From Iphione sp. A-MEVVRFRX5 (lineage: Eukaryota), in NCBI GenBank assembly GCA_976226885.1, contig OZ320319.1, positions 36,828,001 to 36,892,000 on the forward strand: a stretch of 64,000 nucleotides of DNA, read 5' to 3'. The stretch's first letter is position 1. Each line of letters begins with the position of its first letter. Shown piece by piece: positions 33,269 to 60,710 of this stretch. The notes below the pieces were generated by a model. That model saw only the letters and a list, made by a program, of their open reading frames with translations. It did no database searches and was not told the origin of the DNA. The translations under genes and the position numbers were made by a program.

Positions 33269-33384
33269 AGGGGTTCATGGGAGAAAAATGGAAGCGAGTC
33301 TACTGTCGTCTGTACAAGGACTCCTCGTTTTTCTGGTTCAAGAATCCCGACGACCCCACGTCGAAAGGAAACGTTATGCTCAAG
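33269..33384 (+). CDS. PH-domain exon (beta2-beta4): xGFMGEKWKRVYCRLYKDSSFFWFKNPDDPTSKGNVMLK
   Basis: Context ctcttctgtatttgcag|AG...AAG|gtgagt, 116 nt, phase 1 to 0. Carries the PH signature WKRxYxxL...L/FxWF...KG. Confidence 0.92.
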
Positions 33385-36300
33385 GTGAGTTACTTTTAAT
33401 GATTCCAATTATTTTAATAACGACCAACATCTCCTTGAAAAGAGTACTCTTATTTTACTCAACTGCTATCCGATTAATGGGCTGTCGCATGTACATGTAT
33501 ACCACAATAGAAATCTATAGGCACCCTTCGGTGGGTATTTTTGGAAGTGGTACGGCGTCTTTTATTGAGTTATCGTGTGCTTTTGACGTCATTTAATTCC
33601 ACAGTTTGGAATCCAAAGATAACCGAAAAACGGGATTGGTTTGAGTTTTTTTTTCCTCGTCGTGAAGTTTTTGCCTTGGCCAAAGCCCACAAGATCGATG
33701 GGAGACGTGTCATGACAGGGCGCTTGTGTACGCTGCCGGTAGAATGACGTCAGTAATGGCGCCCATCTTATGACAGTTTTTGGTCTTTCCGGCTGTCCAC
33801 CCGCTGGATAATGAAGAAATCAAAGTGGGAGAGGCTGGAGGCCGGTTGGGTAAGGACACGGGTTCACTCATGGTTATTATCTCGTCAATCACCGGCAAGC
33901 TCTGCTAATTAATTATTGTTCTAATTAATGGTCGTCTCAAACCCGTCCCCAGGTGATAGGAGCTCGAACTGCCAGCCCCAATGCTCGTGGAAATTAACGA
34001 TTGTAGTTCGATTTTCTAGACGTAAATGTTGGGGGAGGTAGGGGGAAGACAATTTGGGAGAGTACCATTTCATGGCCAAGCGCGCTTTAAAATCCTGCCA
34101 ATTACTTTAAGGTCCGCGAATGATGTCATTAATTCAAGTGCACATCGGCCCTCAACTTGCCTGTTAATTACTTGCAAAACGCAAACAGGTCATCACGAAA
34201 GTTCGTGATTGGAAAGACCTCCGTGAGGCAGTTGCACAAATAAAAACCAGTGACATGATCCATGCGGTATTTGTGATTGGGAAGGCCTTTTCTGGCAATC
34301 ACCGCACCCTATGTTGGCACGTGTGTATTTATGTTTGCCGAGCCAACTGCTCAAACCCTGGCCTATCTTCCCTGTGGCCACATGAATAATTCAAAACATG
34401 TTACTGTGGTCACCTTATTTTCTATGTGATGCTTATAATTAACTTCGCTGTAATCAGTGATAGAATATTTGGGTGGTGCTGCTTCACTACATTATGTGTT
34501 GATTCGTACAACATAATGATTTAACGTTTGCAGTTTTGGGTCTCTGTTGTTTGAATAATATTGTTTACTGCACACGAAGAAGACATTGATTCCACTTTTG
34601 AAACGGAGCCAGTCAGGTGTAAATAAAACTGAAGTTCCACCTGAATATAAATGCACAGTATCGATGATAAACACGTTTGTAGGTATTTCCCATACTGAAT
34701 TCCATACACTCGCCATACATGTAGTGAAGTCTGTGTCACAATGTTTTTAGGAAGGGATTACTTGTTGACCCGTCACACAGCCCTTGGTAATAGCTCTAAA
34801 ACCTCAGACCGAAGGTCCCGTCACCCACCATGCCATGCTGCTTTCGGCAAGCTGCCCCATAAAGAATATTTGACCAGCCGACGTCAGCAGGTTTTAGCCC
34901 ACCCAGTAGATTCTGTCGAATTATTCGCTCGGCCGTAAACCTGGCACTTTTTGTAGAGGCATTCCTGTTGGCCGAACTAATTATACAATAGCCTGTGTCC
35001 CTTGTCAGACACTTGGCACAGCGCTTGTACTTAACTGTGGACAATGTTGATATATGGCGGGGACCAAGTAGCGACCGTCGCTTGGAATTCCGGTCCAGAG
35101 GTTCCGCCTTGTAGAAAGAGCAACATCTATCTTTGTTAACGAAATGGCTTTTCTTGGACTGGGGAAAACGCATTAATACAGTGCCACAGTTGCATCAATT
35201 TGGAGGATGTTTACTCGTCTAAGCTGTGCGCCAAGATGTTGAAACCCATCAGCCATGCTTTTCGGTAGGGTAAAAAAAATGAGGTCTTCCTACCGGAGAG
35301 GGTCAAGCCTCACAAGCCGAACAGGGAATCTAACGTAATCCGGAGCACGCATTTGTCAGGCTTGAAGGGATTAGTTTCTTTTTTTTTTCATTGACTCTTG
35401 CCATAAAAACTTGCTGGACAGAGCAGTTGGCAGCCTAGGTTGTCTAGAAGTTCACTGCCGAGCCATATATATTTCGTCGAGATTTAATCAACTTCAGTTT
35501 GCTATCATTGTGGAAGATGGCCGGTGTCCAGGCTAAAATTATTTTAGATCAGCCGGACGGACTTCGGCTAGAATGGATACCAACGCACGATAAGACCTAA
35601 ATCGATACGACCTACCCGGGTAATGAGCTTCATACTGGATGATAATATAGACAGTGGAGAGGCCAGGGAATTATGCTATCATCTCTCACTCAGTGATATT
35701 TCGAATAAACTATTGATTTAATGCTTTTCCCTATTCCTTTACCATTAAAAAAAACAAGTGAAACGGAGCAGGCGGGCCAGCCCTGGTGGAAAAGGGTTAT
35801 CGGGAGATATTGCCTTCATAAACTGCCTTGTCTTATACAGCCCAGTTCATCTTTGCGTGTCGCTGCCGCCTTTGTGGGTTTCTTCCGCTGAACTCAGCAG
35901 TTGGCCTCTACCTGCCAGCCGCCGTCGAACACCGTACATGCCTGCCATTGATCTGGCCGGGGCCTTAGCCATTGAAGACTGAGCTCAGCCAATATTGCAG
36001 TGTCCCTCGCGCCTTGGCGCCTTGTTCGGCCTTTCGTGGAAATGGCTTGTTATTCACCGGAGGTTTCTGAGGTTCCCCCACCCCTCCACCCAGCTAGCAC
36101 CCCCGCTAGCCGAAGGTCTGCGCTACCATAGAAAGCCAACACTCTTCTCCCCTTCGGCCCGAGCCCAGTGCCGGCTGCCCGGCCGAGTAGGCGTCTTTGA
36201 GAGTCGGTCTTTTCCGTGTCCATTGGCTCAATCACACGCCTCTGTGGTCAATATGACGCCACGCCTTGCGCCTAAGCAACAGTCCAGGGTTGAATGCCGT

Positions 36301-37367: not shown

Positions 37368-38173
37368 GTGAGTTATCCGCGAGATGGAGAGGAGGCGGCA
37401 TTGCAGCAGTCGTCCGTAAACACCCAGTCATTGTGCCGATATTTACCTCTCGGAGGCGCCTTATTGTGTTAACGTAGGTTGCAGATTGTATTTGATACAA
37501 TGAAATCGATCGGTCTAGAATCATTACGAAGGAACGGGATTAATATTGCGTTACGTAATGCCTCTGCCAAGAGGATGAGAATTTTATATCAGGTTTAAGA
37601 CCATCTCTGATTGCTGGGTCGTACCTAGTGATCAACTTGTCTCATCGGCTCAGACGCGTTCAGTCTGGTTTAATAGCTTCCAACTCCAACACAAATCCCT
37701 GTTTAAACACGGACTAAACAACCAATCACTGAGCCAGACGTATTATATTTAGTGGGGATAACCACCGCCTACAGAACCAATTAAATCCATGATGTACCTC
37801 GCTAGCTGAACGGAGATCGTTTTATGTGACTGCGTTCAGATATCGACTGCTTTGGCATCCGGAGTCTTATTTGTTCCACGACTTAAACGGGGAGCTTTCT
37901 TTCTAATTGATCTATCTCCTTGATATCTTAGGAGATTGGCCTGAACGTTTCTTAGTGAAAAATATCATTGGGTGATTTTGTAAAGGATTCTTGAAATACA
38001 TGTATTATCAAGAGGTCACTGTGTCGTGTGTATGCGTATAGATTGACTCAATCCACCTTTTCCTCGTTGTAAAAATCTAGGTAATGTCAATGAAATTCGT
38101 TTGGAATGTGCGGATATCAATACTTAATTGAATCCCCAACCCTACCCCTTACGATAAATATTGGTAATGTACC

Positions 38174-38175
<2 letters not shown>

Positions 38176-38223
<48 letters not shown>

Positions 38224-38242
38224 TGTGTGTGTGTGTGTGTGT
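38176..38242. repeat. (TG)n microsatellite
   Basis: About 33 TG units with one GA interruption at 38221. Confidence 0.98.
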
Positions 38243-38863
38243 CTCATCCCTCATTCCAAATCTTCGGTTCCCCGCTACATCGAAAGGGGCCATAGGAACA
38301 CTGTGGTTTGCCTGTCCGACCCTCTGTCATAACTTTGTGGGTGTACCTCCTACCGAACCATAGGGTCAAATGAAATGAGCGTCTCTATATTGGAGCTTGG
38401 TACTGGCGTATTTTAGTGTAATGTAAAGCATTAAAAATAACAGTGAGGGGAAAGCATTTAGTTTGAAGAGCCCCCCACCATGATCTTGTGGGTCTATCTA
38501 CTCTCAAACTATAAGGTAATTATTTTGTAATATACTATTCTATATGCAGGCTTACAACTGGCTTATTTTGGTATCATTTCAGATATTTCAAGTAACAAAG
38601 GCAGATGAAAACTTAAAGTTATAGGAGAGAATATGAAGTTGTACATATTGTCAATTTGCTTAATCAAACCGGAACAATTACGTCCACTCGATCGACCAGC
38701 TGCCGGGGGGGGGGCACAGACCTTACAGCTTACCTTTTTCGTTACTCCTGTTTTTGTCTTTTAAAAAACTAACTGAGCTGCAAGTTTACTGCAAATTTAC
38801 CTGTAATTTCGTCATCATATTATAGTTATGAAGGTGGACTGTACGCGTAGCATAGTTGATCAT

Positions 38864-44988: not shown

Positions 44989-45152
44989 ACGATCTGCAAT
45001 TTCCTTACGGTTGGCTCGTACGTGCGCGCAATTCCTCACAGCCCTGAGCTACCGTCTGGTGCTCGAATTGATCACGTCATTGCAATCCCCCAAGAACCCC
45101 GAAAAAAGACGAAAATCCATTGGTTTCTCTGTGAAAACGATGACGAACTCAA
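44989..45152 (+). CDS. PH-domain exon: TICNFLTVGSYVRAIPHSPELPSGARIDHVIAIPQEPRKKTKIHWFLCENDDEL
   Basis: Context ttaccctttcttccag|...AA|gtaagt, 164 nt, phase 0 to 2. Encodes the PH beta5-beta7 strands and the start of the helix. Confidence 0.92.
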
Positions 45153-45498: not shown

Positions 45499-45526
45499 TG
45501 AATGGATGTCTGCTATTTGTAGTACA
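45499..45526 (+). CDS. 28-nt microexon encoding the PH C-terminal helix (N)EWMSAICST
   Basis: Context tttctgttttattacag|...ACA|gtaagt, phase 2 to 0. It supplies the invariant PH helix Trp and bridges the phases of the flanking exons. Confidence 0.87.
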
Positions 45527-45784: not shown

Positions 45785-45968
45785 TTACCCGAGCCCCCGA
45801 AAGAACCGGAGCCAGAGAAGGCGGCACCACAGCCCCCGGTGTCGCCATCTGCTCACAAGGGTGTGTCCCACTCTGGTATGCCCCCTGCTACCCTTTCCGG
45901 TCACATTCCCCCATACCCCTCCGCAGGAAGCCACCCTGCCCAACTAGGCTTTGAATCCTTCACGTCAA
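45785..45968 (+). CDS. Pro-rich linker exon: LPEPPKEPEPEKAAPQPP...HIPPYPSAG...FESFTS
   Basis: Context tcgtttgtcttgccag|...A|gtaagt, 184 nt, phase 0 to 1, open. Confidence 0.88.
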
Positions 45969-47651: not shown

Positions 47652-48095
47652 ACCCACCGCCATACAGTGCGGTCCCACCGCCAGTCTCTGGGAATGCCTC
47701 TGCCCCTCCCGCCCCTTCCCATGCCCCTCCCCCGCCAGGTGGCCCCCCACCCCCAACTGCCACCTACGTCCAGCCGATGCAGGCGGCGCCGTTGCAAAGT
47801 CAACCCTATCCGTACGCCAGTGCGGGAGGGCAGCCACCCTATGGGCAGCAACCGCCCTATGGGCAGCAGCCACCCTATGGCCAGCCACCACCGCCTGGCC
47901 AAGTGCCCTATGGTCAGCCGGCTCCCTACCAGCAGCAGCCTTACCAGCAGCCCTATGGTCAGCCTCCGTATGGTCAGCCACCATACGCTGGCCAGCCACC
48001 CTATGGCCAACAGCCCTATGGCCAACAGCCCTATGGCCAACAGCAGCCCACTGGCCAGCCACAGTACTACCCTCAGCAGCAGCCACCACATCCAG
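47652..48095 (+). CDS. PPPY motif plus (GQ/QQ)PPY low-complexity exon
   Basis: Context gtctgttggttacag|AC...CCAG|gtaaag, 444 nt, phase 1 to 1. Reads [11 protein letters not shown]...[18 protein letters not shown]...[10 protein letters not shown]. Confidence 0.92.
47829..48043 (+). repeat. Coding tandem repeats (15-18-nt units; CCCTATGGCCAACAG x3 at 47999-48043)
   Basis: Exact 15-nt triplet plus imperfect GGGCAGCA(A/G)CC(G/A)CCCTAT units, all in frame. Confidence 0.9.
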
Positions 48096-53007: not shown

Positions 53008-53178
53008 GGTACATGCATGGCTCGATGGGCAACGTGCCTCCCCCACCTGGTTACCAGCAGGGAGGCTTCCAACAGGGGGCCTATGGGCCAGCAGGAGGCC
53101 AGTTTGGTAATTTCCGCGGTGCTCAAACGCAGGCGGCTAAGGACACCGGCACTAAAGGTGTAGGGAAGATGGCAGCAG
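53008..53178 (+). CDS. Exon: GYMHGSMGNVPPPPGYQQGGFQQGAYGPAGGQFGNFRGAQTQAAKDTGTKGVGKMAA
   Basis: Context cccctctcttctcacag|GG...GCAG|gtatgt, 171 nt, phase 1 to 1. Contains PPGY (a PPxY motif). Confidence 0.88.
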
Positions 53179-55086
53179 GTATGTATCAATACAGCCGATT
53201 CTTGACCCCATTTCAAGAACTATATCTCCTTGAAAGGTTTGCGGCTGATGAGCAAGGTATGTGCAGACGTTCACGTAATCTTTTCTAAATCAGGACTTGT
53301 GATGGTGAGTATGCGGTGTAAAGAGTGGAAGGTAATTTTCAGTGATATAAACGGTATTCATTGTAATTACACTATGCAAATGTCAAGTTTCAAGCAGTTA
53401 TCTTCTCAAGAGAAACAGCTCGTCTCAGCTGAAATTAACCGTTCTCTACCCATTTCACTTTAATTATTATGGACAATAATAGAAAGATACGTGACAGCTG
53501 TATATAAATAGAGTCGACAGGTGTTAGATTCAGGCGGTAGCACACAAGGACAAGAGGTTTGTTCCATACATGTATAGCTTACTATTGTGTCTATGCTGTC
53601 CTCTGTGGTGCCCTGAAAGCAGATGGCCTTGCTTTTCTTGAGGTGTGAATGTAATATTTGAGTATGGGACGTAAGACTGAATGGTCGGTAAAATGGGGAG
53701 GCGTTTTCTCTTTCTTTTTGTACATGTACTTTATATAGCCAAAATATGTGGAAGTAACGAAATACGTATGCTTTCAGGGTGTCTCCCTAGTTGTTTCCTT
53801 TATAGAATGAAGCTGTAATTTGGCTCCATTGATAACTGCGTAATTGAGACAAGATTCTATAACAGACACAAATTTATCTATGAATGGATATGTCGCCGTT
53901 AGATTCTTTTATTGTTTTTTTTCCACTGTAATAATCCTACTGGTTATGCTGATTAACGTCCGAGTGGGTTGTGCTTGAGTGCATACTTGTTGTGGTGTCT
54001 TCTAAATCGTCTCTCTTCGTAATGAGATTATTTGTGGTAAGTACGAGTAGTGCAGACATTCTTCCAAGTTCGTTTTCTTTCATCTTCAAATACTTAGCAG
54101 TCGTAGTATTGACGAGATGTATACATTTTCGACGTTTTATTTCCTGTGCAACGTAATTGTTACATTATAGTCAAGCCGACGATAATATCTGGACAATCAT
54201 AAAGAAATATAAAACTGATTTAAAACTAGACGCAGTCTGTCTTCACGGCTGGTACTTATGCGACCACAAGACACTTAACGGCAAAGTAACAGTGATTCTA
54301 CGATATACAAATACATAACGAATAGAGACAACTTTTAGAGACACACAAAGTAGAAACTCGCTATCTTTGAAGATTCTGTGGAGCTAAAAATCCAAAGAAG
54401 GGTTTTCTCAAGAAATGCCTTGCCAATGCTAAAGGGCCCCAGGGGACCGCCAGAACAATTAGCCTGGAATCCCAGACCAAGTGTCAGTAATTCAGACATT
54501 TGTTAAAGGATAAGCAATCGCCAAGCTAAGTAATGATTTCAAAGCAATTGATTACTTAGATTTGATGATACTGATTCGATAAGGATGATCGGACGGGACA
54601 CACTTTGATATCTAAAGGTCATTATTCCCAGACAAAAATCATCACAGTAAAATTTTATTCCTGCTGTATAGTATGAAGGGCCCCTTCCTTACAGTGGAGG
54701 GCCGAGTACATGTACTTTTTATTAATATAACTTACAGACACGCACGATGTGTCTGGCATACCGTCTATGTTAGACTTTTTATAAACCTCGTACATTAAAG
54801 ATATTTACGACAATAATAATTACAACATAAGACAAAACATGAACTGTTTAGTACAAAACTGATCATGTAAATGAATGACCTCAAACAGCAGTGTAATTTG
54901 TCGGTAATACGGACCTCATAGATGTCAATGTGCGCATTCACAGGACTTAAAGACCTGTCGACCTGGTGCCTTGTACGTGAAACACCGGCACACCTGACCG
55001 ACCCCTAGCGACTACCGCTACCCACTATACCTGTGAGCAGCATAATATCTGTTCCCAGTTACAAAGCCAGTTTGGTATGATTGCAG

Positions 55087-55247
55087 GGTTAGCAGGAGGG
55101 GCACTGGCTGGGTACCTGGCGGGTCGCGTGATGGGTGGTGGGCTTGGTGGGTTTGGGGGCTGGGGCAGAGGCTTTGGCTTTGGCGGCTCCTGGAGCTCAG
55201 GATCCTGGTCCGGGGGCAGTTTTGGCAGTTTCGGCAGCTTCGACTAG
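55087..55247 (+). CDS. Last exon A: (G)LAGGALAGYLAGRVMGGGLGGFGGWGRGFGFGGSWSSGSWSGGSFGSFGSFD*
   Basis: Acceptor ttgcag|GG, phase 1, TAG at 55245-55247. Encodes a hydrophobic Gly-zipper resembling the evectin tail. The upstream AGs at 55058 and 55070 would shift frame. Confidence 0.85.
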
Positions 55248-55599
55248 TTGCCCAGAACGTAGATGACCGTGAGTTGACATGTGACTTTTGAGACCTCTAC
55301 TATACCCAATGACGATAAGATTCGAAAGCATACTTTAAAAAACAGAAAGCATTTTATTCAGAGTGTGACCAAATCTGTTCGTTAGTACACACACACATGC
55401 CTGGTTGCTTTTTTTCTTTCAAGTGTGTTTTGTCTATACATGAGATGTTTCTGTGACGTACTATATAGGTGAGTGCACACTGTCTTGAGCAATATAGGAC
55501 CATAAATTGAAGCGTTTAGTATCAGCTTTTTGTACGTTCAGCAATTGCATTTTGTCAAGTTTTATGCAAGAAAATTATCCAGCCATTGAGCCAAACAAC

Positions 55600-57800
55600 A
55601 TCCAACATTTGTTCCTCTTTTGATCACTATTTTCATCCTCATCACTTGTATACTCCTATCAACTTTATTTCATACCGGCATCATTCATTTTCGCAAATAC
55701 CATGTTGATCGCCAAGCATTTACACATTATTTTCCTTGGGCTATTCACGTGTACAATTGTCTATTGCTTTTCTGTGTATTCATAAGTCTTTTCCTATTTC
55801 TGAGTCCATCATTTATTTCTTTCATCATGAAGATTTGCCACATCACCATTATTCCATTATTATACCGCTCATTTACCTATCACAATACATGTACACGTAT
55901 TTCATATTCCTTTTTTAACGATATTCATGTAAATGATCTGCTGTAATGCGACATATCATAGTATAATCATTTACAAAGCTGCACCATTATTCTCACCATT
56001 CAAGAAATCAATTATAGCAGACATAGAGTTTCCATATATTTCTCAGTAAAAATAGAATATGCACGTAGTTCAATAACTATTGGGCATACTGTCATATTCT
56101 CGGCTACGCGTATTTTTGATTGTCGCCATTTTTTGACTTTTTCATTTTCCTTCTTTGAGGTACTTTTTAACCGTAAATTCTAACTTTGCCACAGTTTCCT
56201 TTGCATTTCCAAAACCAGTCTTTCAACTGAAAATAAGTTATTCTTCAAAAGATTTGGTGACACTTGTGTTTTTTGAAAGGTGAATCTTTTTTGTCGATTA
56301 AGAATTTACACTGGAGAGAGGGTTTTGGGGGTGACGCTTTTCAAGTGGGTGCAGCTTTGTAGGCGCCGTGAGTTTGGTTCGGGTTGTAACATTCTTCTCT
56401 CCCACAGCCTCCGGCCTCAGCGGAGGAGTCGTCGGCAAGGACAAGGACGTGTCAGGTAGACCACTCGCGATCCCCGCGCCCCCCAGCGAGAGAAAGACAC
56501 ATCCAATAGCCCCTCCTGGTCACCGCGCCAACAGAATAGCCCTTCTCACCATAGGAACCGTCGCAAGAGTCTATCCTTTCACAACCTCAGTTCCCCCCTC
56601 CCCCCCCTCTCCTCGCCTTCTTCGAGACCTTCACCACCTCCTGTACTCGCCCTGTTTTCCACTTTGCCTTCATTCGTGTTGTCACCATTATATATCTCTC
56701 CTTCCACCACCTCATCGCAATAGCATTTATATTTATCTTGACTTGATTTTCTTTGGTCTCCTCCTCGTGTACTACCCCGTCCAAATCATCGGTTTCTCTG
56801 TGTTGTTGAATACATATTCTGTATTGAATGCTACTCTCCGGCATTCGACTTCATTTGAACATTGGTCCGGAAAGCTTAGTTTCATTTCATAATTCAGTCT
56901 TCGCCACTATCATTCGGAATTTTCTTTTTAGAAAATTGGGTGATTGATCATCACTGAACTTTGCTAAAAGGTTTAAATTTAAGCCTCCCTCCTTTCTGAA
57001 TCCCTCTTTCCTCTCTTTTCCTGGAAGCCTGTTTCTGATTTCGCTCTTGCTTCAATTCTTCAATAAACATTGCCGACTTTGCACACTGGCTCTTTTTCGA
57101 CTCTCAGAATCGCCTTTCGCTAATGGAAACACTATGGAGTTTTCATTGCTTTGAAATATTTCTTGTCGATATATTAAAATTATATTAAACAAACCGCTAC
57201 TTACTTTCTCCATATTTCATATTACATTGCCTCAGCTTTACCTATGTTCAAACGTTTATAATAAGCATCGACATTATGTCTTGTAATTAACCCAATTATC
57301 CTCTCCCTCTTACTCCATTTCCTTGCATCTTTCTTGAAAATCAATATTGTTATGAACCTTTCCCATTTCTAAGTGTTTTCAATACTCTTGCTCTTACTAT
57401 ATTTTCAACATGAACTTTTCATCTTTATCTATTAAATCAGGCAATAACGTGCGATTTATGTCTGTAACTGCCACTGTATATATAGTAATACACGGAGCAT
57501 CCAACTGCCGTTTCCTTCTTCCATTTTCAATTGCTTCGGTAACAGTTTGCCTCAGTATACTGTCAGTTAATTCTGATAGTTTTTTTCTGACCTTGTCATC
57601 GTACCTGTCTCGAAAGCCAAGTACCTCTCTCCTAAGGTTTTACTTACCATTTGATTGTCTCTGCATGAACATATCATTTTCCTTCCTGCCTTCTCTGAAC
57701 AAGACTCATGTGTCATAAAAAAACAGTTCTCCCATTCCGCCTGGATGTCTGAAGTAGACTCTTTCACCACAAAGTCTCCGAACCATCCTTAATTGGTTTC
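55600..57800 (-). mobile_element. Decayed non-LTR retrotransposon (CR1/L2-like), AP-endonuclease C-terminal half to RT N-terminus
   Basis: Strongly purine-rich minus strand. Ordered motif ghosts: GDFV...EWEN (GDFN..IDW), SELTDSILRQTVTEA...LD (L.Q.V.EPTR..LD), GKVHNNIDF (GKSDH.I.F), VSPNLLK, KKWRQSKI, IIDFL.GENN. Many stops and frameshifts, and a GC-rich insert at about 56350-56650. Confidence 0.5.
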
Positions 57801-60170
57801 TTTTTTACCTGGGTTTCTTTTTACCTGCCTATCTTCTCTCTCTTATATCCTGACCTCTAATGGCCATGGATTGCCCTACTCCTGTATTAATCAATCATGG
57901 TTCGCTATGTCCTGTCCCTGACTGCGCTGGCTGCTGTCTCGTATTCCGACCTTGTCTCCTTGCGCGGAAGATTGCATGGCGCTGTTGGCTGCGCGTGTTA
58001 CCATTGCCCTTCCACTACCACCGCCACCACCACCACCTCAGACATTTGACTTTAACCCAACCGCCCCCCTCCTGCCGCCCAAGATGCCACACTGGTTGCC
58101 TGGTTACCAGTGTTGAGCCCCCAGCCATCACCGACCGTCCTCCTCACGATGGGGACACCTCTGACTTGGACCCAGTTTCCACAGCCAGAGTTGTCCAGTG
58201 AATTGCCTTGACAAATGTTGTTGTGTCTCCAGCGCGATGTGGCCACACCGACTGTCAGCCCTCACGCCTTGCTGGGCTTGTGGTATATAATCATCCTGTC
58301 CTCTTTGACCTGCTCCCCTATAAACTAGCGCCTCACCTCCATCGATGATTACACCATTCATTAGCAACTATGAATGACGCATGCGTATCGCTCTCTGTCT
58401 CTCTCTCCGTCTATCTCGCTGTCTCGGACTCTCTTTATCTCTGCATCTCTCTACCGTCCACCTTTCCGGTGTGTCAAAATACATGATCAGTGTGTTTCCT
58501 ATACCCACCGATCCGCCCACGAGAGCATCAGCCAGCAATCTATCATTTTAATCGACACCAAGTTCGAGCCCCTCGCCTGGGAGCGCTAACTTGAACAGAT
58601 AAAACCAGAATGTCGCCATTGTCATGTATACGCAAAGGCGCATCCTAATGGAAAGGCAGTTCGAGGAGTCTAGCCATGGTTACCACACCCTCCCCTTGAT
58701 AGGTGTATGACGGTAGTCAACAACTGCAGTTGGTATAGGAATGATACCAACCAAGAGAGAGAGAGCTGCTGATAAAGATGTATACTGGGGACCACTGTTT
58801 CGAGGGCTCTGTATCAGTACAGCTTCATAGCGCTGGGCGAAAAACATTCAGATTTCAGAAATGTGTAAATTGGTTTACTGTGTCTTCAGTCTCGCGCGGC
58901 GAACTAGCAGCGCGTTAGGCACATATATGTACATGTATACGTTCTTCTTTTCATTTGCCATCTCCTTGTGAAGCACACTGGTACAAATACTGTGACACCA
59001 CGTCTTATGTAGTAGTCATACAGCTCTCGAGTAAGGTGGTTGCATCCTTTGAGAAAGTCCTAGCTGCATTAACAATGTATTAGTAATCATTTCTCACAGC
59101 AGTTCCAGTGCATTTTTTACCGTATGAACCCTTTGGCTCTCCAGGCAGGACACCTCCATTGCCCTTCCAAGAGAATGCGTTAGTGTGGTGTACTTGTTGC
59201 GCTTCTAACCCAAAGTGTGCATCTTGTTTACCTCAATACGCAACCACAACCGACGCATTGTCATTGTGCTGGTGACGTGTACTATACACCCATAAAGAAA
59301 ACGTAGACAGAGAAAATAGCGTCACAATATAAACAACATACACTATTTTTTGTCTTTAAATACAAATAACATTAGTCTACATGTATATCTTTTGAGGTAT
59401 GCTAGACAAATTTTTAACTTGATCTAAAAATTAGGCTGATTCAGATTTGATGCTTTCGAGGGTTGATATTTGCTTTTTCATTCAGTGATATCTAATTGGG
59501 CATTGAAGAGGCTCACGCGCACGAGGTATTACGGTATATTATGCATAATATAGATAGGTCACAGCGATTACTTGAACATATCCCTATCGAATTTCCTTCG
59601 TTCTGTCTCACTTGAAACAAAAAATACGACTAACAAAACCAAATTGATGCCTTTACCAAATTCAAACGGTGAAAACAAATTCCTCATGAATTTCCATGTA
59701 CTTCAAATCCTTTGAACTTTTCTGGTCGATGCAAATAGTATTTTTCCACCCGACTAGACGAACGAAGCAAATTTTACCAAAGGCGATACTGCAGAATCCT
59801 TAGAAGGCATTGTTGTTAGTTGAGCAGCTGTCATACTGGACTGGCACCTAGACACCCGTTGCGGGCACCCAGGCCATGCAGCTGTGGCGCCCTCTATCAT
59901 CTGAGCAAATGTCGTCTGTTTGATGCAGAAGACGGTCTGTCGGCGCTGTGGGAATTCCTGAAAGGCACATGATAAAAGATACCACCTTGTGGCGGCATTA
60001 TATTGCAGGCTGCTCGGCCGCCTTCCTGGCAATGACAGCGAGTCTCACTAACAACTTTGCATCAGGATACCGGTTGTATTAGCGCCGGGATGCCCGTATG
60101 ACCTTCGTACACAATTGTTCTCTGTTAACACTCGAGAGCTGTGCTAACACTCCACCTGGTGTGCTTTCAG

Positions 60171-60358
60171 GGCTGATGGGAGGAGTGACGGGTGTCCAAC
60201 AGAAGCAGGAGACGAGCATGAGCGAGAAGCTCTGGGGCTGGGGCGTGGGAGGGGGGTGGGGTTCGTGGGGTTCGCACAGCTGGGGCAGCAACAACAGCTT
60301 TGGTAGCATCGGCGACCACAGCGTACCTTCTATGGGAAGCTTCGGGAGTTTCGACTAA
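60171..60358 (+). CDS. Alternative last exon B (paralog of exon A): (G)LMGGVTGVQQKQETSMSEKLWGWGVGGGWGSWGSHSWGSNNSFGSIGDHSVPSMGSFGSFD*
   Basis: Branch point gctaac at 60143-60148, acceptor gtgctttcag|GG, phase 1 as in exon A. Starts GLxGG and ends GSFGSFD* as in exon A, with synonymous codon differences. Confidence 0.72.
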
Positions 60359-60710
60359 CACCAGCGACATCCGGTGGGCCGCGCGCGACGTTGGCGACGA
60401 CGACGTGGGCGACGGTGGCGACCTCGACGACGACAGTATCGACGACCTCGGCAACGACGACGACGAAATCGAGATCGGCATCGACGGTCACAGCGACGGC
60501 ATCGACGGCGGCCAAGTCGACGGCAACAAGAACTACAGCAAGAGCAACAGTAACTGCGCCAAGGGTTTCTACACGGCAGATCGCTTTTGTATGCAGACAA
60601 CGAAGCAGACGAGGACAAGAATCAGGATGACTTATGGAAGAAAAAAAAACACCGATGCATATACGCTGAAGATTTTAGATAACGAGAGGTGTTTTCGGAA
60701 CGCATGCTGA
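60357..60710 (+). CDS. Asp/Gly-rich reading frame starting +1 inside the exon B stop codon
   Basis: NTSDIRWAARDVGDDDVGDGGDLDDDSIDDLGNDDDEIEIGIDGHSDGIDGGQVDG... Most codons to about 60575 end in C or G (GAC/GGC/ATC/AAC). Open to TGA at 60708-60710. Confidence 0.45.
   Translation, partial: NTSDIRWAARDVGDDDVGDGGDLDDDSIDDLGNDDDEIEIGIDGHSDGIDGGQVDGNKNYSKSNSNCAKGFYTADRFCMQTTKQTRTRIRMTYGRKKNTDAYTLKILDNERCFRNAC

What the first reader, a model, noticed from the sequence alone, without database searches (positions are those of the whole stretch)
55087..60358. Duplicated alternative last exons: a membrane-anchor versus WG-hook switch
Both exons follow the same phase-1 donor (53178), start GLxGG and end GSFGSFD*. 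They differ at synonymous positions, which argues for duplication followed by selection on both. Exon A encodes a hydrophobic Gly-zipper (GLAGGALAGYLAG) like the evectin tail anchor. Exon B replaces it with polar QQKQETSMSEK followed by five WG dipeptides (WGWGVGGGWGSWGSHSWG). WG/GW repeats are the established Argonaute-hook motif. One gene could therefore yield a membrane-anchored isoform and a soluble isoform that might link PH lipid binding and PPxY ubiquitin-ligase recruitment to RISC. This is the best candidate for a novel system in the window; the function is inference.
Basis: partly seen in the sequence, partly recalled or inferred. Interest (0 to 1): 0.82.

Follow-up and report, generated by a model that had tools for sequence, protein, structure and literature searches.

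The report
Duplicated last exon, evectin-like gene
An invertebrate gene for a lipid-binding adaptor protein carries two ancient, still-intact copies of its last coding exon, one with and one without a glycine-zipper segment; this is probably an ordinary alternative-ending arrangement, and the proposed link to Argonaute is not supported.

Summary
Exon A (55087-55247) and exon B (60171-60358) both fit the phase-1 donor at 53178. Both begin GLxGG and end GSFGSFD-stop. They are true paralogues (alignment z = 5.5), and synonymous sites between them are saturated.

An orthologous mRNA (P0032) fixes the gene model: PH domain, PPPY, a Pro/Gln/Tyr-rich linker, then the tail. Only the last exon is duplicated in the window.

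A-type tail exons turned up in about 15 other species. No B-type exon was found anywhere else, including within 10 kb of the tail exon in two species.

Exon B keeps every family-invariant position of the distal tail and lacks only the conserved zipper (GAALGY.A..MG). This argues that B is a selected coding exon. Expression could not be tested, because no RNA run was listed.

Two parts of the interpretation fail:
- The "membrane anchor" is only weakly hydrophobic (Kyte-Doolittle 0.7-1.2).
- The Trp/Gly cluster is not a B-specific replacement. Exon A and the orthologue carry the same tail, and more distant relatives have Phe where these have Trp.

The Argonaute-hook reading is therefore unsupported. 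An FGSF motif, matching the published G3BP-binding FGxF core, is conserved in most of the orthologues. Exon A may be a cassette exon, since GTGAGT lies 22 nt after its stop. The scan had not found this on other DNA.

The parts
33269..33385 (+). PH-domain exon (GFMGEKWKRVYCRLYKDSSFFWFKNPDDPTSKGNVMLK). It enters in phase 1 and leaves in phase 0. The first coding exon was not located in the window.
   Evidence: Pfam PH E=0.048 on the exon alone. It aligns to P0032 residues 13-54. P0032 itself scores Pfam PH 1.5e-11.
44989..45152 (+). Second PH-domain exon (TICNFLTVGSYVRAIPHSPELPSGARIDHVIAIPQEPRKKTKIHWFLCENDDEL).
   Evidence: tblastn with P0032 residues 54-108, E=9e-15. The same exon is present in orthologous loci L002 and L011/L013.
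45499..45526 (+). 28-nt exon for the PH C-terminal helix (N-EWMSAICST).
   Evidence: Motif search and sequence reading. It matches ELNDWMNAITST of P0032.
45785..45968 (+). Pro-rich linker exon (LPEPPKEPEPEK...). Alternative phase-1 donors lie after 45860 and 45875.
   Evidence: Sequence reading. Weak tblastn match to P0032 residues 127-179. Which donor is used is not known.
47652..48095 (+). PPPY exon with PYGQQ-type repeats, phase 1 to phase 1 (444 nt).
   Evidence: tblastn E=1.4e-26 to P0032. PPPY sits directly after the PH domain, as in evectin-2 (PMC5665887).
53008..53178 (+). Penultimate coding exon (GYMHGSMGNVPPPPGYQQ...GTKGVGKMAA + G), phase 1 to phase 1. Its donor serves both tail exons.
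   Evidence: There is no second copy of it in the window.
55087..55247 (+). Tail exon A: Gly-zipper plus aromatic/Gly/Ser tail, ending GSFGSFD*. The acceptor is weak (45% pyrimidines).
   Evidence: 62.5% identical to the P0032 tail. A-type exons occur in about 15 other species.
55269..55274 (+). GTGAGT donor-like site 22 nt after the exon A stop. A second one (TAG|GTGAGT) lies at 55469. These are possible donors that would make exon A a cassette exon spliced on to exon B.
   Evidence: No such site follows the single tail exon in L006 or L007, and none lies within 1.5 kb after exon B. Its use is inferred.
60171..60358 (+). Tail exon B: vestigial zipper start (GLMGGVTGV), polar linker (QQKQETSMSEK), Trp-enriched aromatic/Gly/Ser tail, ending GSFGSFD*. 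The acceptor is strong (70% pyrimidines, CTAAC branch-like site at 60144).
   Evidence: It keeps all family-invariant positions of the distal tail. No counterpart was found in other species.

Best explanation
The window holds most of an invertebrate evectin-like adaptor gene. Its parts are an N-terminal PH domain, a PPPY motif, a long Pro/Gln/Tyr-rich disordered linker and a conserved C-terminal module.

That module has two parts: a Gly-zipper segment (GxxxG repeats, family consensus GLIGGAALGYGASRMMG) and an aromatic/Gly/Ser tail ending SFGSFD-COOH. The exon encoding it was duplicated in tandem long ago.

Copy A keeps both parts. Copy B keeps the distal tail, which is Trp-enriched and carries a 5-residue insert, but has a polar linker in place of the zipper.

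Both copies accept the same phase-1 donor. One gene can therefore make two proteins that differ only by the presence of the zipper.

I infer that the zipper gives membrane embedding or self-association, by analogy with the C-terminal hydrophobic segment of vertebrate evectins. The shared tail would then serve the same partner in both isoforms.

The splicing mode is open. Either A is a cassette exon joined to B through the GTGAGT 22 nt after its stop (a stop less than 50 nt from the junction should escape nonsense-mediated decay), or A and B are alternative last exons with separate poly(A) sites.

Shown: the anatomy, the homology, the age of the duplication and the pattern of conservation. Inferred: that both exons are spliced in, and what the zipper does.
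For: - Sequence and phase of both exons.
- Homology beyond composition, z = 5.5.
- Synonymous sites are saturated while the termini stay identical: pS 0.73, pN 0.10 in the last 8 codons, 17 of 25 same-residue codons differ. This excludes recent duplication, gene conversion and haplotype artefact. It also makes neutral survival of a 62-codon frame, its acceptor and its stop unlikely.
- Gene model from orthologue mRNA P0032.
- Only the tail exon is duplicated.
- The A-type module is conserved in about 15 species, and exon B retains all invariant distal positions L1, G4, G20, G28, S34, W35, S37, G42, S44, G46, S47.
- Exon B also keeps SFGSxG, which exon A has lost.
- Exon B has the stronger acceptor and a branch-point match. 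Exon A has donor-like sites after its stop that single-tail species lack.
- Evectins are PH proteins with a C-terminal anchor, and evectin-2 has PPPY at Pro129 that binds Itch, WWP1 and WWP2 (PMC8740049; PMC5665887).
- Human PLEKHB2 is alternatively spliced at its penultimate exon (PMC12602317).
Against: - There is no transcript evidence: no RNA run was listed.
- No B-type exon was found in any other species. All 15 word-search hits are A-type. Two species show a single tail exon within +/-10 kb. P0032's 64-nt 3' UTR is not B-like.
- The closest relative (Logan runs behind L008/L009, 86% nucleotide identity in the PH exon) could not be examined at the tail.
- The zipper is too weakly hydrophobic for a standard transmembrane call, so its role is uncertain.
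- The middle of the A/B alignment is unreliable, so rate estimates rest on few codons.
- Similarity to PLEKHB PH domains is weak (E = 0.003-0.04; IPCEF1 and SKAP55 score better).
Confidence: 0.55

Rival explanations
1. Exon B is an unused relic of an old exon duplication. Only the exon A isoform is made.
For: No B-type tail was seen in other species. No RNA evidence is available. The G-rich composition lowers the chance of stop codons arising.
Against: Synonymous sites are saturated, yet the frame, phase-1 acceptor, polypyrimidine tract, branch-like CTAAC, all invariant distal-tail residues and the stop position are intact. Exon B also keeps ancestral residues that exon A has lost.
Confidence: 0.17
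2. Isoform B is a soluble protein whose five WG dipeptides form a GW182-type Argonaute hook, linking PH lipid binding and PPxY ligase recruitment to RISC.
For: Exon B has five W, all followed by G, in a Gly/Ser/Asn context. Seven WG/GW dipeptides are counted in exon B, against two in exon A.
Against: The same W/G tail occurs together with the zipper in exon A and in P0032. W and F interchange across orthologues, and only one W is invariant. The cluster spans 18 residues, whereas described domains span 92-654 residues. Phe is disfavoured in such domains, and Gly-rich segments are typical false positives (PMC2910046). No AGO data exist.
Confidence: 0.04
3. Exon B belongs to a separate downstream transcription unit, or is an assembly or haplotype artefact.
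For: A CpG-rich, GC-rich stretch lies at 60.2-60.6 kb. An in-frame ATG at 60098 gives an 86-codon ORF.
Against: No copies of any other exon of the gene lie between A and B or after B. Exon B begins exactly at a phase-1 acceptor with the same G|GG junction codon. A and B share only about 40% of residues and have saturated synonymous sites, so they are not alleles.
Confidence: 0.05
4. The conserved C-terminal FGSF(D) is an FGxF-type ligand for the NTF2-like domain of G3BP. If so, the protein would tether RNP granules to membranes, and the splice choice would set how it sits on the membrane.
For: The published core motif is FGxF with x = D, E or S. Both F and the G are essential, it is often followed by acidic residues, and it is sometimes C-terminal (PMC4450067). 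Exon A ends FGSFGSFD, exon B ends FGSFD, P0032 has FGSFGSWD, and most orthologues end FGSFD.
Against: FGSF is expected fairly often in a G/S/F-rich tail. One clade (P0054, P0056, P0057) ends FGSIGSFD with no FGxF at all. No binding data exist. The link is motif-level only.
Confidence: 0.1

Closest known systems
Evectin-2 / PLEKHB2 (and evectin-1 / PLEKHB1)
   Same: Both have an N-terminal PH domain and a PPPY motif directly after it (Pro129 in evectin-2). Both have a Pro/Tyr-rich linker and a C-terminal small-residue-rich hydrophobic segment. Both show alternative splicing near the 3' end (PMC8740049, PMC5665887, PMC12602317).
   Different: PH-domain similarity is weak (E = 0.003-0.04, not the best PDB hits). 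The zipper here is much less hydrophobic. It is followed by a conserved 30-residue aromatic/Gly/Ser tail ending GSFGSFD. The alternative endings come from a duplicated exon.
GW182/TNRC6-type WG/GW Argonaute hook
   Same: W is flanked by G or S in a Gly/Ser-rich, probably disordered segment. Exon B has five WG dipeptides.
   Different: The segment is very short, contains Phe and is not specific to isoform B. The W positions are not conserved across orthologues. No silencing-related domain or context is present.
Tandem exon duplication giving alternative or mutually exclusive exons
   Same: The two exons are adjacent and homologous, have identical phase, and are interchangeable in frame.
   Different: These are terminal coding exons, each with its own stop. 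The copies differ by loss of one sub-module rather than by point substitutions. Usage is unproven.
FGxF (FGDF) G3BP-binding motif of alphavirus nsP3, USP10 and HSV-1 ICP8
   Same: The terminal FGSF(D) matches the published core, including the Ser variant. It is tandem in exon A and lies at the C-terminus.
   Different: It sits in low-complexity G/S/F sequence where it may arise by composition alone. It is absent in one orthologue clade and is untested.
Glycine-zipper (GxxxG-repeat) membrane or oligomerisation segments
   Same: Exon A has nine Gly in i, i+4 register. The family consensus is GLIGGAALGYGASRMMGG.
   Different: No Pfam Gly-zipper family matched. Hydrophobicity is below transmembrane thresholds.

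Membership tests
Evectin/PLEKHB-like adaptor | N-terminal PH domain | tested here: met
   Pfam PH 1.5e-11 in orthologue P0032. The window exons align to it.
Evectin/PLEKHB-like adaptor | PPxY motif just after the PH domain | tested here: met
   DPPPY/NPPPY at 47652 onward. Evectin-2 has PPPY at Pro129 (PMC5665887). WW-domain binding was not tested.
Evectin/PLEKHB-like adaptor | C-terminal transmembrane anchor (type IV topology) | tested here: inconclusive
   The best 19-residue Kyte-Doolittle mean is 1.18 in isoform A, 0.62 in isoform B and 0.7-1.2 in orthologues. Thirty conserved residues follow the segment.
Evectin/PLEKHB-like adaptor | Sequence orthology of the PH domain to PLEKHB1/2 | tested here: inconclusive
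   PLEKHB2 E = 0.0027 and 0.013, PLEKHB1 E = 0.039. IPCEF1, SKAP55, myosin X and pleckstrin score better.
WG/GW Argonaute hook | Extended hydrophilic domain with many WG/GW motifs | tested here: not met
   Five W lie within 18 residues of a 62-residue exon. Described domains span 92-654 residues (PMC2910046).
WG/GW Argonaute hook | Tryptophans conserved among orthologues | tested here: not met
   W counts range from 1 to 5. F or M occupy the other aromatic positions, and only the W of GSW is invariant.
WG/GW Argonaute hook | Binding to Argonaute PIWI-domain Trp pockets | not testable with these tools
   This needs pull-down or co-IP with W-to-A mutants.
Alternative terminal exons from tandem duplication | Homologous adjacent exons with the same phase and intact frames | tested here: met
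Alternative terminal exons from tandem duplication | Both exons joined to the common upstream exon in transcripts | not testable with these tools
   The look-up of sequencing runs listed no run, so read laying could not be used.
FGxF G3BP-binding motif | Core F-G-[DES]-F with both Phe and the Gly present | tested here: met
   FGSF occurs twice in exon A and once in exon B. The consensus comes from PMC4450067. It is absent in P0054, P0056 and P0057. Binding is untested.

The most novel reading that the evidence does not exclude
The shared aromatic/Gly/Ser tail (GSW.S...SFGS.G..FGSFD-COOH) is a cytosolic docking platform for RNP-granule proteins. The likeliest partner is G3BP, through its FGxF groove; Argonaute, through Trp pockets, is much less likely. 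On this reading the PH-PPxY adaptor tethers RNA granules to acidic-lipid membranes. The duplicated-exon switch would then decide whether the tether also carries the Gly-zipper, which would make it embedded or oligomeric.
Probability: 0.1. Interest if true: 0.75.

Novelty: new variant of a known kind. Interest (0 to 1): 0.36.

Why it matters
If both exons are used, a single splice choice adds or removes a conserved Gly-zipper on a lipid-binding adaptor that can recruit ubiquitin ligases, while keeping its conserved C-terminal motif. That would be a clean natural experiment on what the evectin-type C-terminal segment does.

The work also defines an invertebrate protein family with no Pfam model for its tail: PH, PPPY, a Pro/Gln/Tyr-rich linker, a Gly-zipper and a tail ending GSFGSFD.

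It removes an attractive but unsupported link to RNA silencing.

Tried and rejected
- **RNA evidence.** The look-up of sequencing runs on exon B plus its 3' flank listed no run, so read laying was never usable.
- **Word search with the Pro-rich stretch**. It returned only low-complexity hits.
- **Word search with the P0032 PH region**. It returned only P0032 itself.
- **Walking an orthologous 64-kb contig** (L002-L005). It showed the PH exons and the PPxY exon, but no tail within 27 kb before the contig ended.
- **A compact orthologue** (L011/L013). Its penultimate exon is followed by a convergent LRR-TIR gene, and the contig ends before any tail exon.
- **Metagenome scan with the tail alignment**. 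600 pattern matches were found and none was confirmed.
- **ESM Atlas and our-findings look-ups with exon B**. Both were blank.
- **A third acceptor-like site at 53780**. It opens only a 10-codon unrelated frame, so it was rejected.
- **A prion-protein-like reading of the zipper**, recalled from memory. There was no PDB sequence hit for the tail, so it was dropped.
- **Pfam on all exons and tails.** Only PH matched.
- **Rfam and tRNA scans of the window.** Both were empty.
- **Poly(A) hexamers.** The scan was uninformative.
- **Structure prediction.** It was not run, because the tails are low-complexity.
Full report
**Observation.** The donor ...GCAGCAG|GTATGT ends the penultimate coding exon at 53178, in phase 1.
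- After the acceptor ...GATTGCAG, exon A (55087-55247) reads GLAGGALAGYLAGRVMGGGLGGFGGWGRGFGFGGSWSSGSWSGGSFGSFGSFD-stop.
- After ...GCTTTCAG, exon B (60171-60358) reads GLMGGVTGVQQKQETSMSEKLWGWGVGGGWGSWGSHSWGSNNSFGSIGDHSVPSMGSFGSFD-stop.
- Their global alignment scores 90, against 28.5 +/- 11 for composition-preserving shuffles (z = 5.5).
- Of the 25 aligned codons that encode the same residue, 17 differ. pS is 0.73, which is saturation. The last eight codons have pN 0.10.

The duplication is old. It is neither a haplotype artefact nor a product of gene conversion.

**Gene model.** A phmmer search with the PH exon found fragments from related species and one full-length orthologue. That orthologue is P0032, 384 aa, from a metatranscriptome mRNA contig.

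P0032 consists of a PH domain (Pfam 1.5e-11), PPPY, a long Pro/Gln/Tyr-rich region and the tail GLDLASGAALGYLAGSMMAPRPMFGGWGGGYGGGWGCHGSWSSHSWSGSFGSFGSWD.

Aligning P0032 to the window places these exons:

| Exon | Coordinates |
|---|---|
| PH, first part | 33269-33385 |
| PH, second part | 44989-45152 |
| PH C-terminal helix | 45499-45526 |
| Pro-rich linker | 45785-45968 (alternative donors after 45860 and 45875) |
| PPPY and repeats | 47652-48095 |
| Penultimate | 53008-53178 |
| Tail A | 55087-55247 |
| Tail B | 60171-60358 |

The first coding exon was not found in the window. No other exon of the gene has a second copy there. Exon B is therefore a lone duplicate of the terminal exon, not part of a second gene.

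**Comparison across species.** A word search used an alignment of exon A, exon B and the P0032 tail. It returned 15 ORF fragments from other species. All are A-type, for example GLIGGAALGYGASRMMGGFGHFGGFGMGRCGSWSSLSSFGSCGSFGSFGSFD-stop.

Two of these were fetched with 10 kb on each side (L006, L007). Each has Pro/Gln-rich exons upstream and a single tail exon, with no B-like exon.

The 13-sequence alignment shows two things:
- Exon B keeps every invariant column of the family (L1, G4, G20, G28, S34, W35, S37, G42, S44, G46, S47). It even keeps the ancestral SFGSxG block that exon A has lost.
- The nearly invariant zipper positions (A5, G8, Y9 and others) are the ones B lacks.

Exon B is thus the family's distal tail with a polar linker in place of the zipper and a 5-residue insert. 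An intact frame, acceptor, stop position and invariant residues alongside saturated synonymous divergence argue for long-term purifying selection on B.

I could not see exon B in any other species. The closest relative available is represented by L008/L009 (86% nucleotide and 100% protein identity in the PH exon). It is covered only by a 3-kb contig around that exon.

**Membrane anchor.**
- The best 19-residue Kyte-Doolittle mean is 1.18 for isoform A (MAAGLAGGALAGYLAGRVM).
- It is 1.18 for P0032, 0.7-0.8 for the other A-type exons and 0.62 for isoform B.
- All of these lie below the customary 1.6 cut-off.
- The 30 residues after the zipper are the best-conserved part of the tail and are retained in both isoforms. 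If the zipper crossed the bilayer, the same conserved motif would face opposite compartments in the two isoforms.

I therefore treat the zipper as a membrane-embedding or self-association element of uncertain topology, not as a proven tail anchor.

The architectural likeness to evectins is still good. Evectins are PH proteins predicted to be anchored by a C-terminal segment (PMC8740049). Evectin-2 has PPPY at Pro129 that binds Itch, WWP1 and WWP2 (PMC5665887). Human PLEKHB2 is alternatively spliced at its penultimate exon (PMC12602317). PH sequence similarity to PLEKHB1/2 is weak.

**Argonaute hook.**
- Trp counts in the tails are 5 (exon B), 3 (exon A), 5 (P0032, with the zipper present) and 1-2 in the more distant orthologues. 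In the distant orthologues F or M fill the other aromatic positions.
- Only the W of GSW is invariant.
- The W/G cluster is therefore ancestral to the tail, is not specific to the zipper-less isoform, and is not conserved as Trp.
- It spans 18 residues and sits among Phe residues.
- The published WG/GW study reports domains of 92-654 residues. It finds Phe the most disfavoured residue relative to Gly and names Gly-rich segments as typical false positives (PMC2910046).

The reading is not excluded by experiment, but nothing here supports it.

**A lead found in passing.** The terminal FGSFGSFD (exon A) and FGSFD (exon B) match the published G3BP-binding core FGxF with x = D, E or S. In that core both Phe and the Gly are essential, and it is often followed by acidic residues (PMC4450067). 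It is present in most orthologues but absent in P0054, P0056 and P0057. In G/S/F-rich sequence it could be compositional. I rate it as a testable lead only.

**Splicing mode.**
- Exon B has the better acceptor: 70% pyrimidines and CTAAC 27 nt upstream.
- Exon A has a weak acceptor: 45% pyrimidines and no branch-like motif.
- GTGAGT lies 22 nt after the exon A stop, and TAG|GTGAGT lies 222 nt after it.
- No such site lies within 1.5 kb after exon B. None follows the single tail exons of L006 and L007.
- No AATAAA or ATTAAA occurs within 1.8 kb of the exon A stop.

This fits exon A being a cassette exon spliced on to exon B. Its stop would then lie 21 nt from the junction, which by the usual 50-nt rule is too close to trigger nonsense-mediated decay. 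That is an inference from signals only. Separate poly(A) sites remain equally possible.

**Limits.** No RNA run was listed for this sequence, so expression of either junction is untested. Rate estimates rest on a small number of reliably aligned codons.

**Verdict.** This is a real, old tandem duplication of the terminal coding exon of an evectin-like PH-PPxY gene. It most likely gives two C-termini that differ by a conserved Gly-zipper. The 'WG hook to RISC' idea is not supported, and 'membrane anchor versus soluble' is plausible but weaker than stated.

Noticed in passing
window 60358-60530 (ORF 60300-60710 in the +1 frame): Directly after the exon B stop lies a CpG-rich (o/e 1.0-1.7), GC-rich run of GAC/GGC-type units. 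It is open in several frames on both strands. The +1 frame would give an Asp-rich peptide. I saw no evidence that it is coding.
   Followed up: partly
It has no counterpart in orthologue P0032. Its only PH-like frame needs two carried-over bases, whereas the preceding exon ends in phase 0.
   Followed up: partly
L013 3383-6763 (minus strand): In a compact orthologous locus, a 1126-aa single-exon LRR-TIR (Toll-like receptor type) gene lies convergently just after the penultimate exon. It is apparently inside, or abutting, the last intron of the PH-PPxY gene.
   Followed up: no
P0043 (Larinioides sclopetarius, CAL1292229.1): A spider protein carries two copies of a related PH-plus-proline-rich unit, separated by Cys-rich EGF-like repeats. 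It may be a fused or tandem gene model of a paralogous family.
   Followed up: no
window 38160-38250: A long (TG)n microsatellite lies in the 11.6-kb intron between the PH exons. Reverse-transcriptase and endonuclease fragments fill the corresponding introns of the orthologue (L002-L005).
   Followed up: no
window 47800-48095: The [10 protein letters not shown] repeats of the linker resemble Tyr/Gly/Gln-rich low-complexity domains. No family matched, and a database search with the stretch returned only compositional hits.
   Followed up: partly
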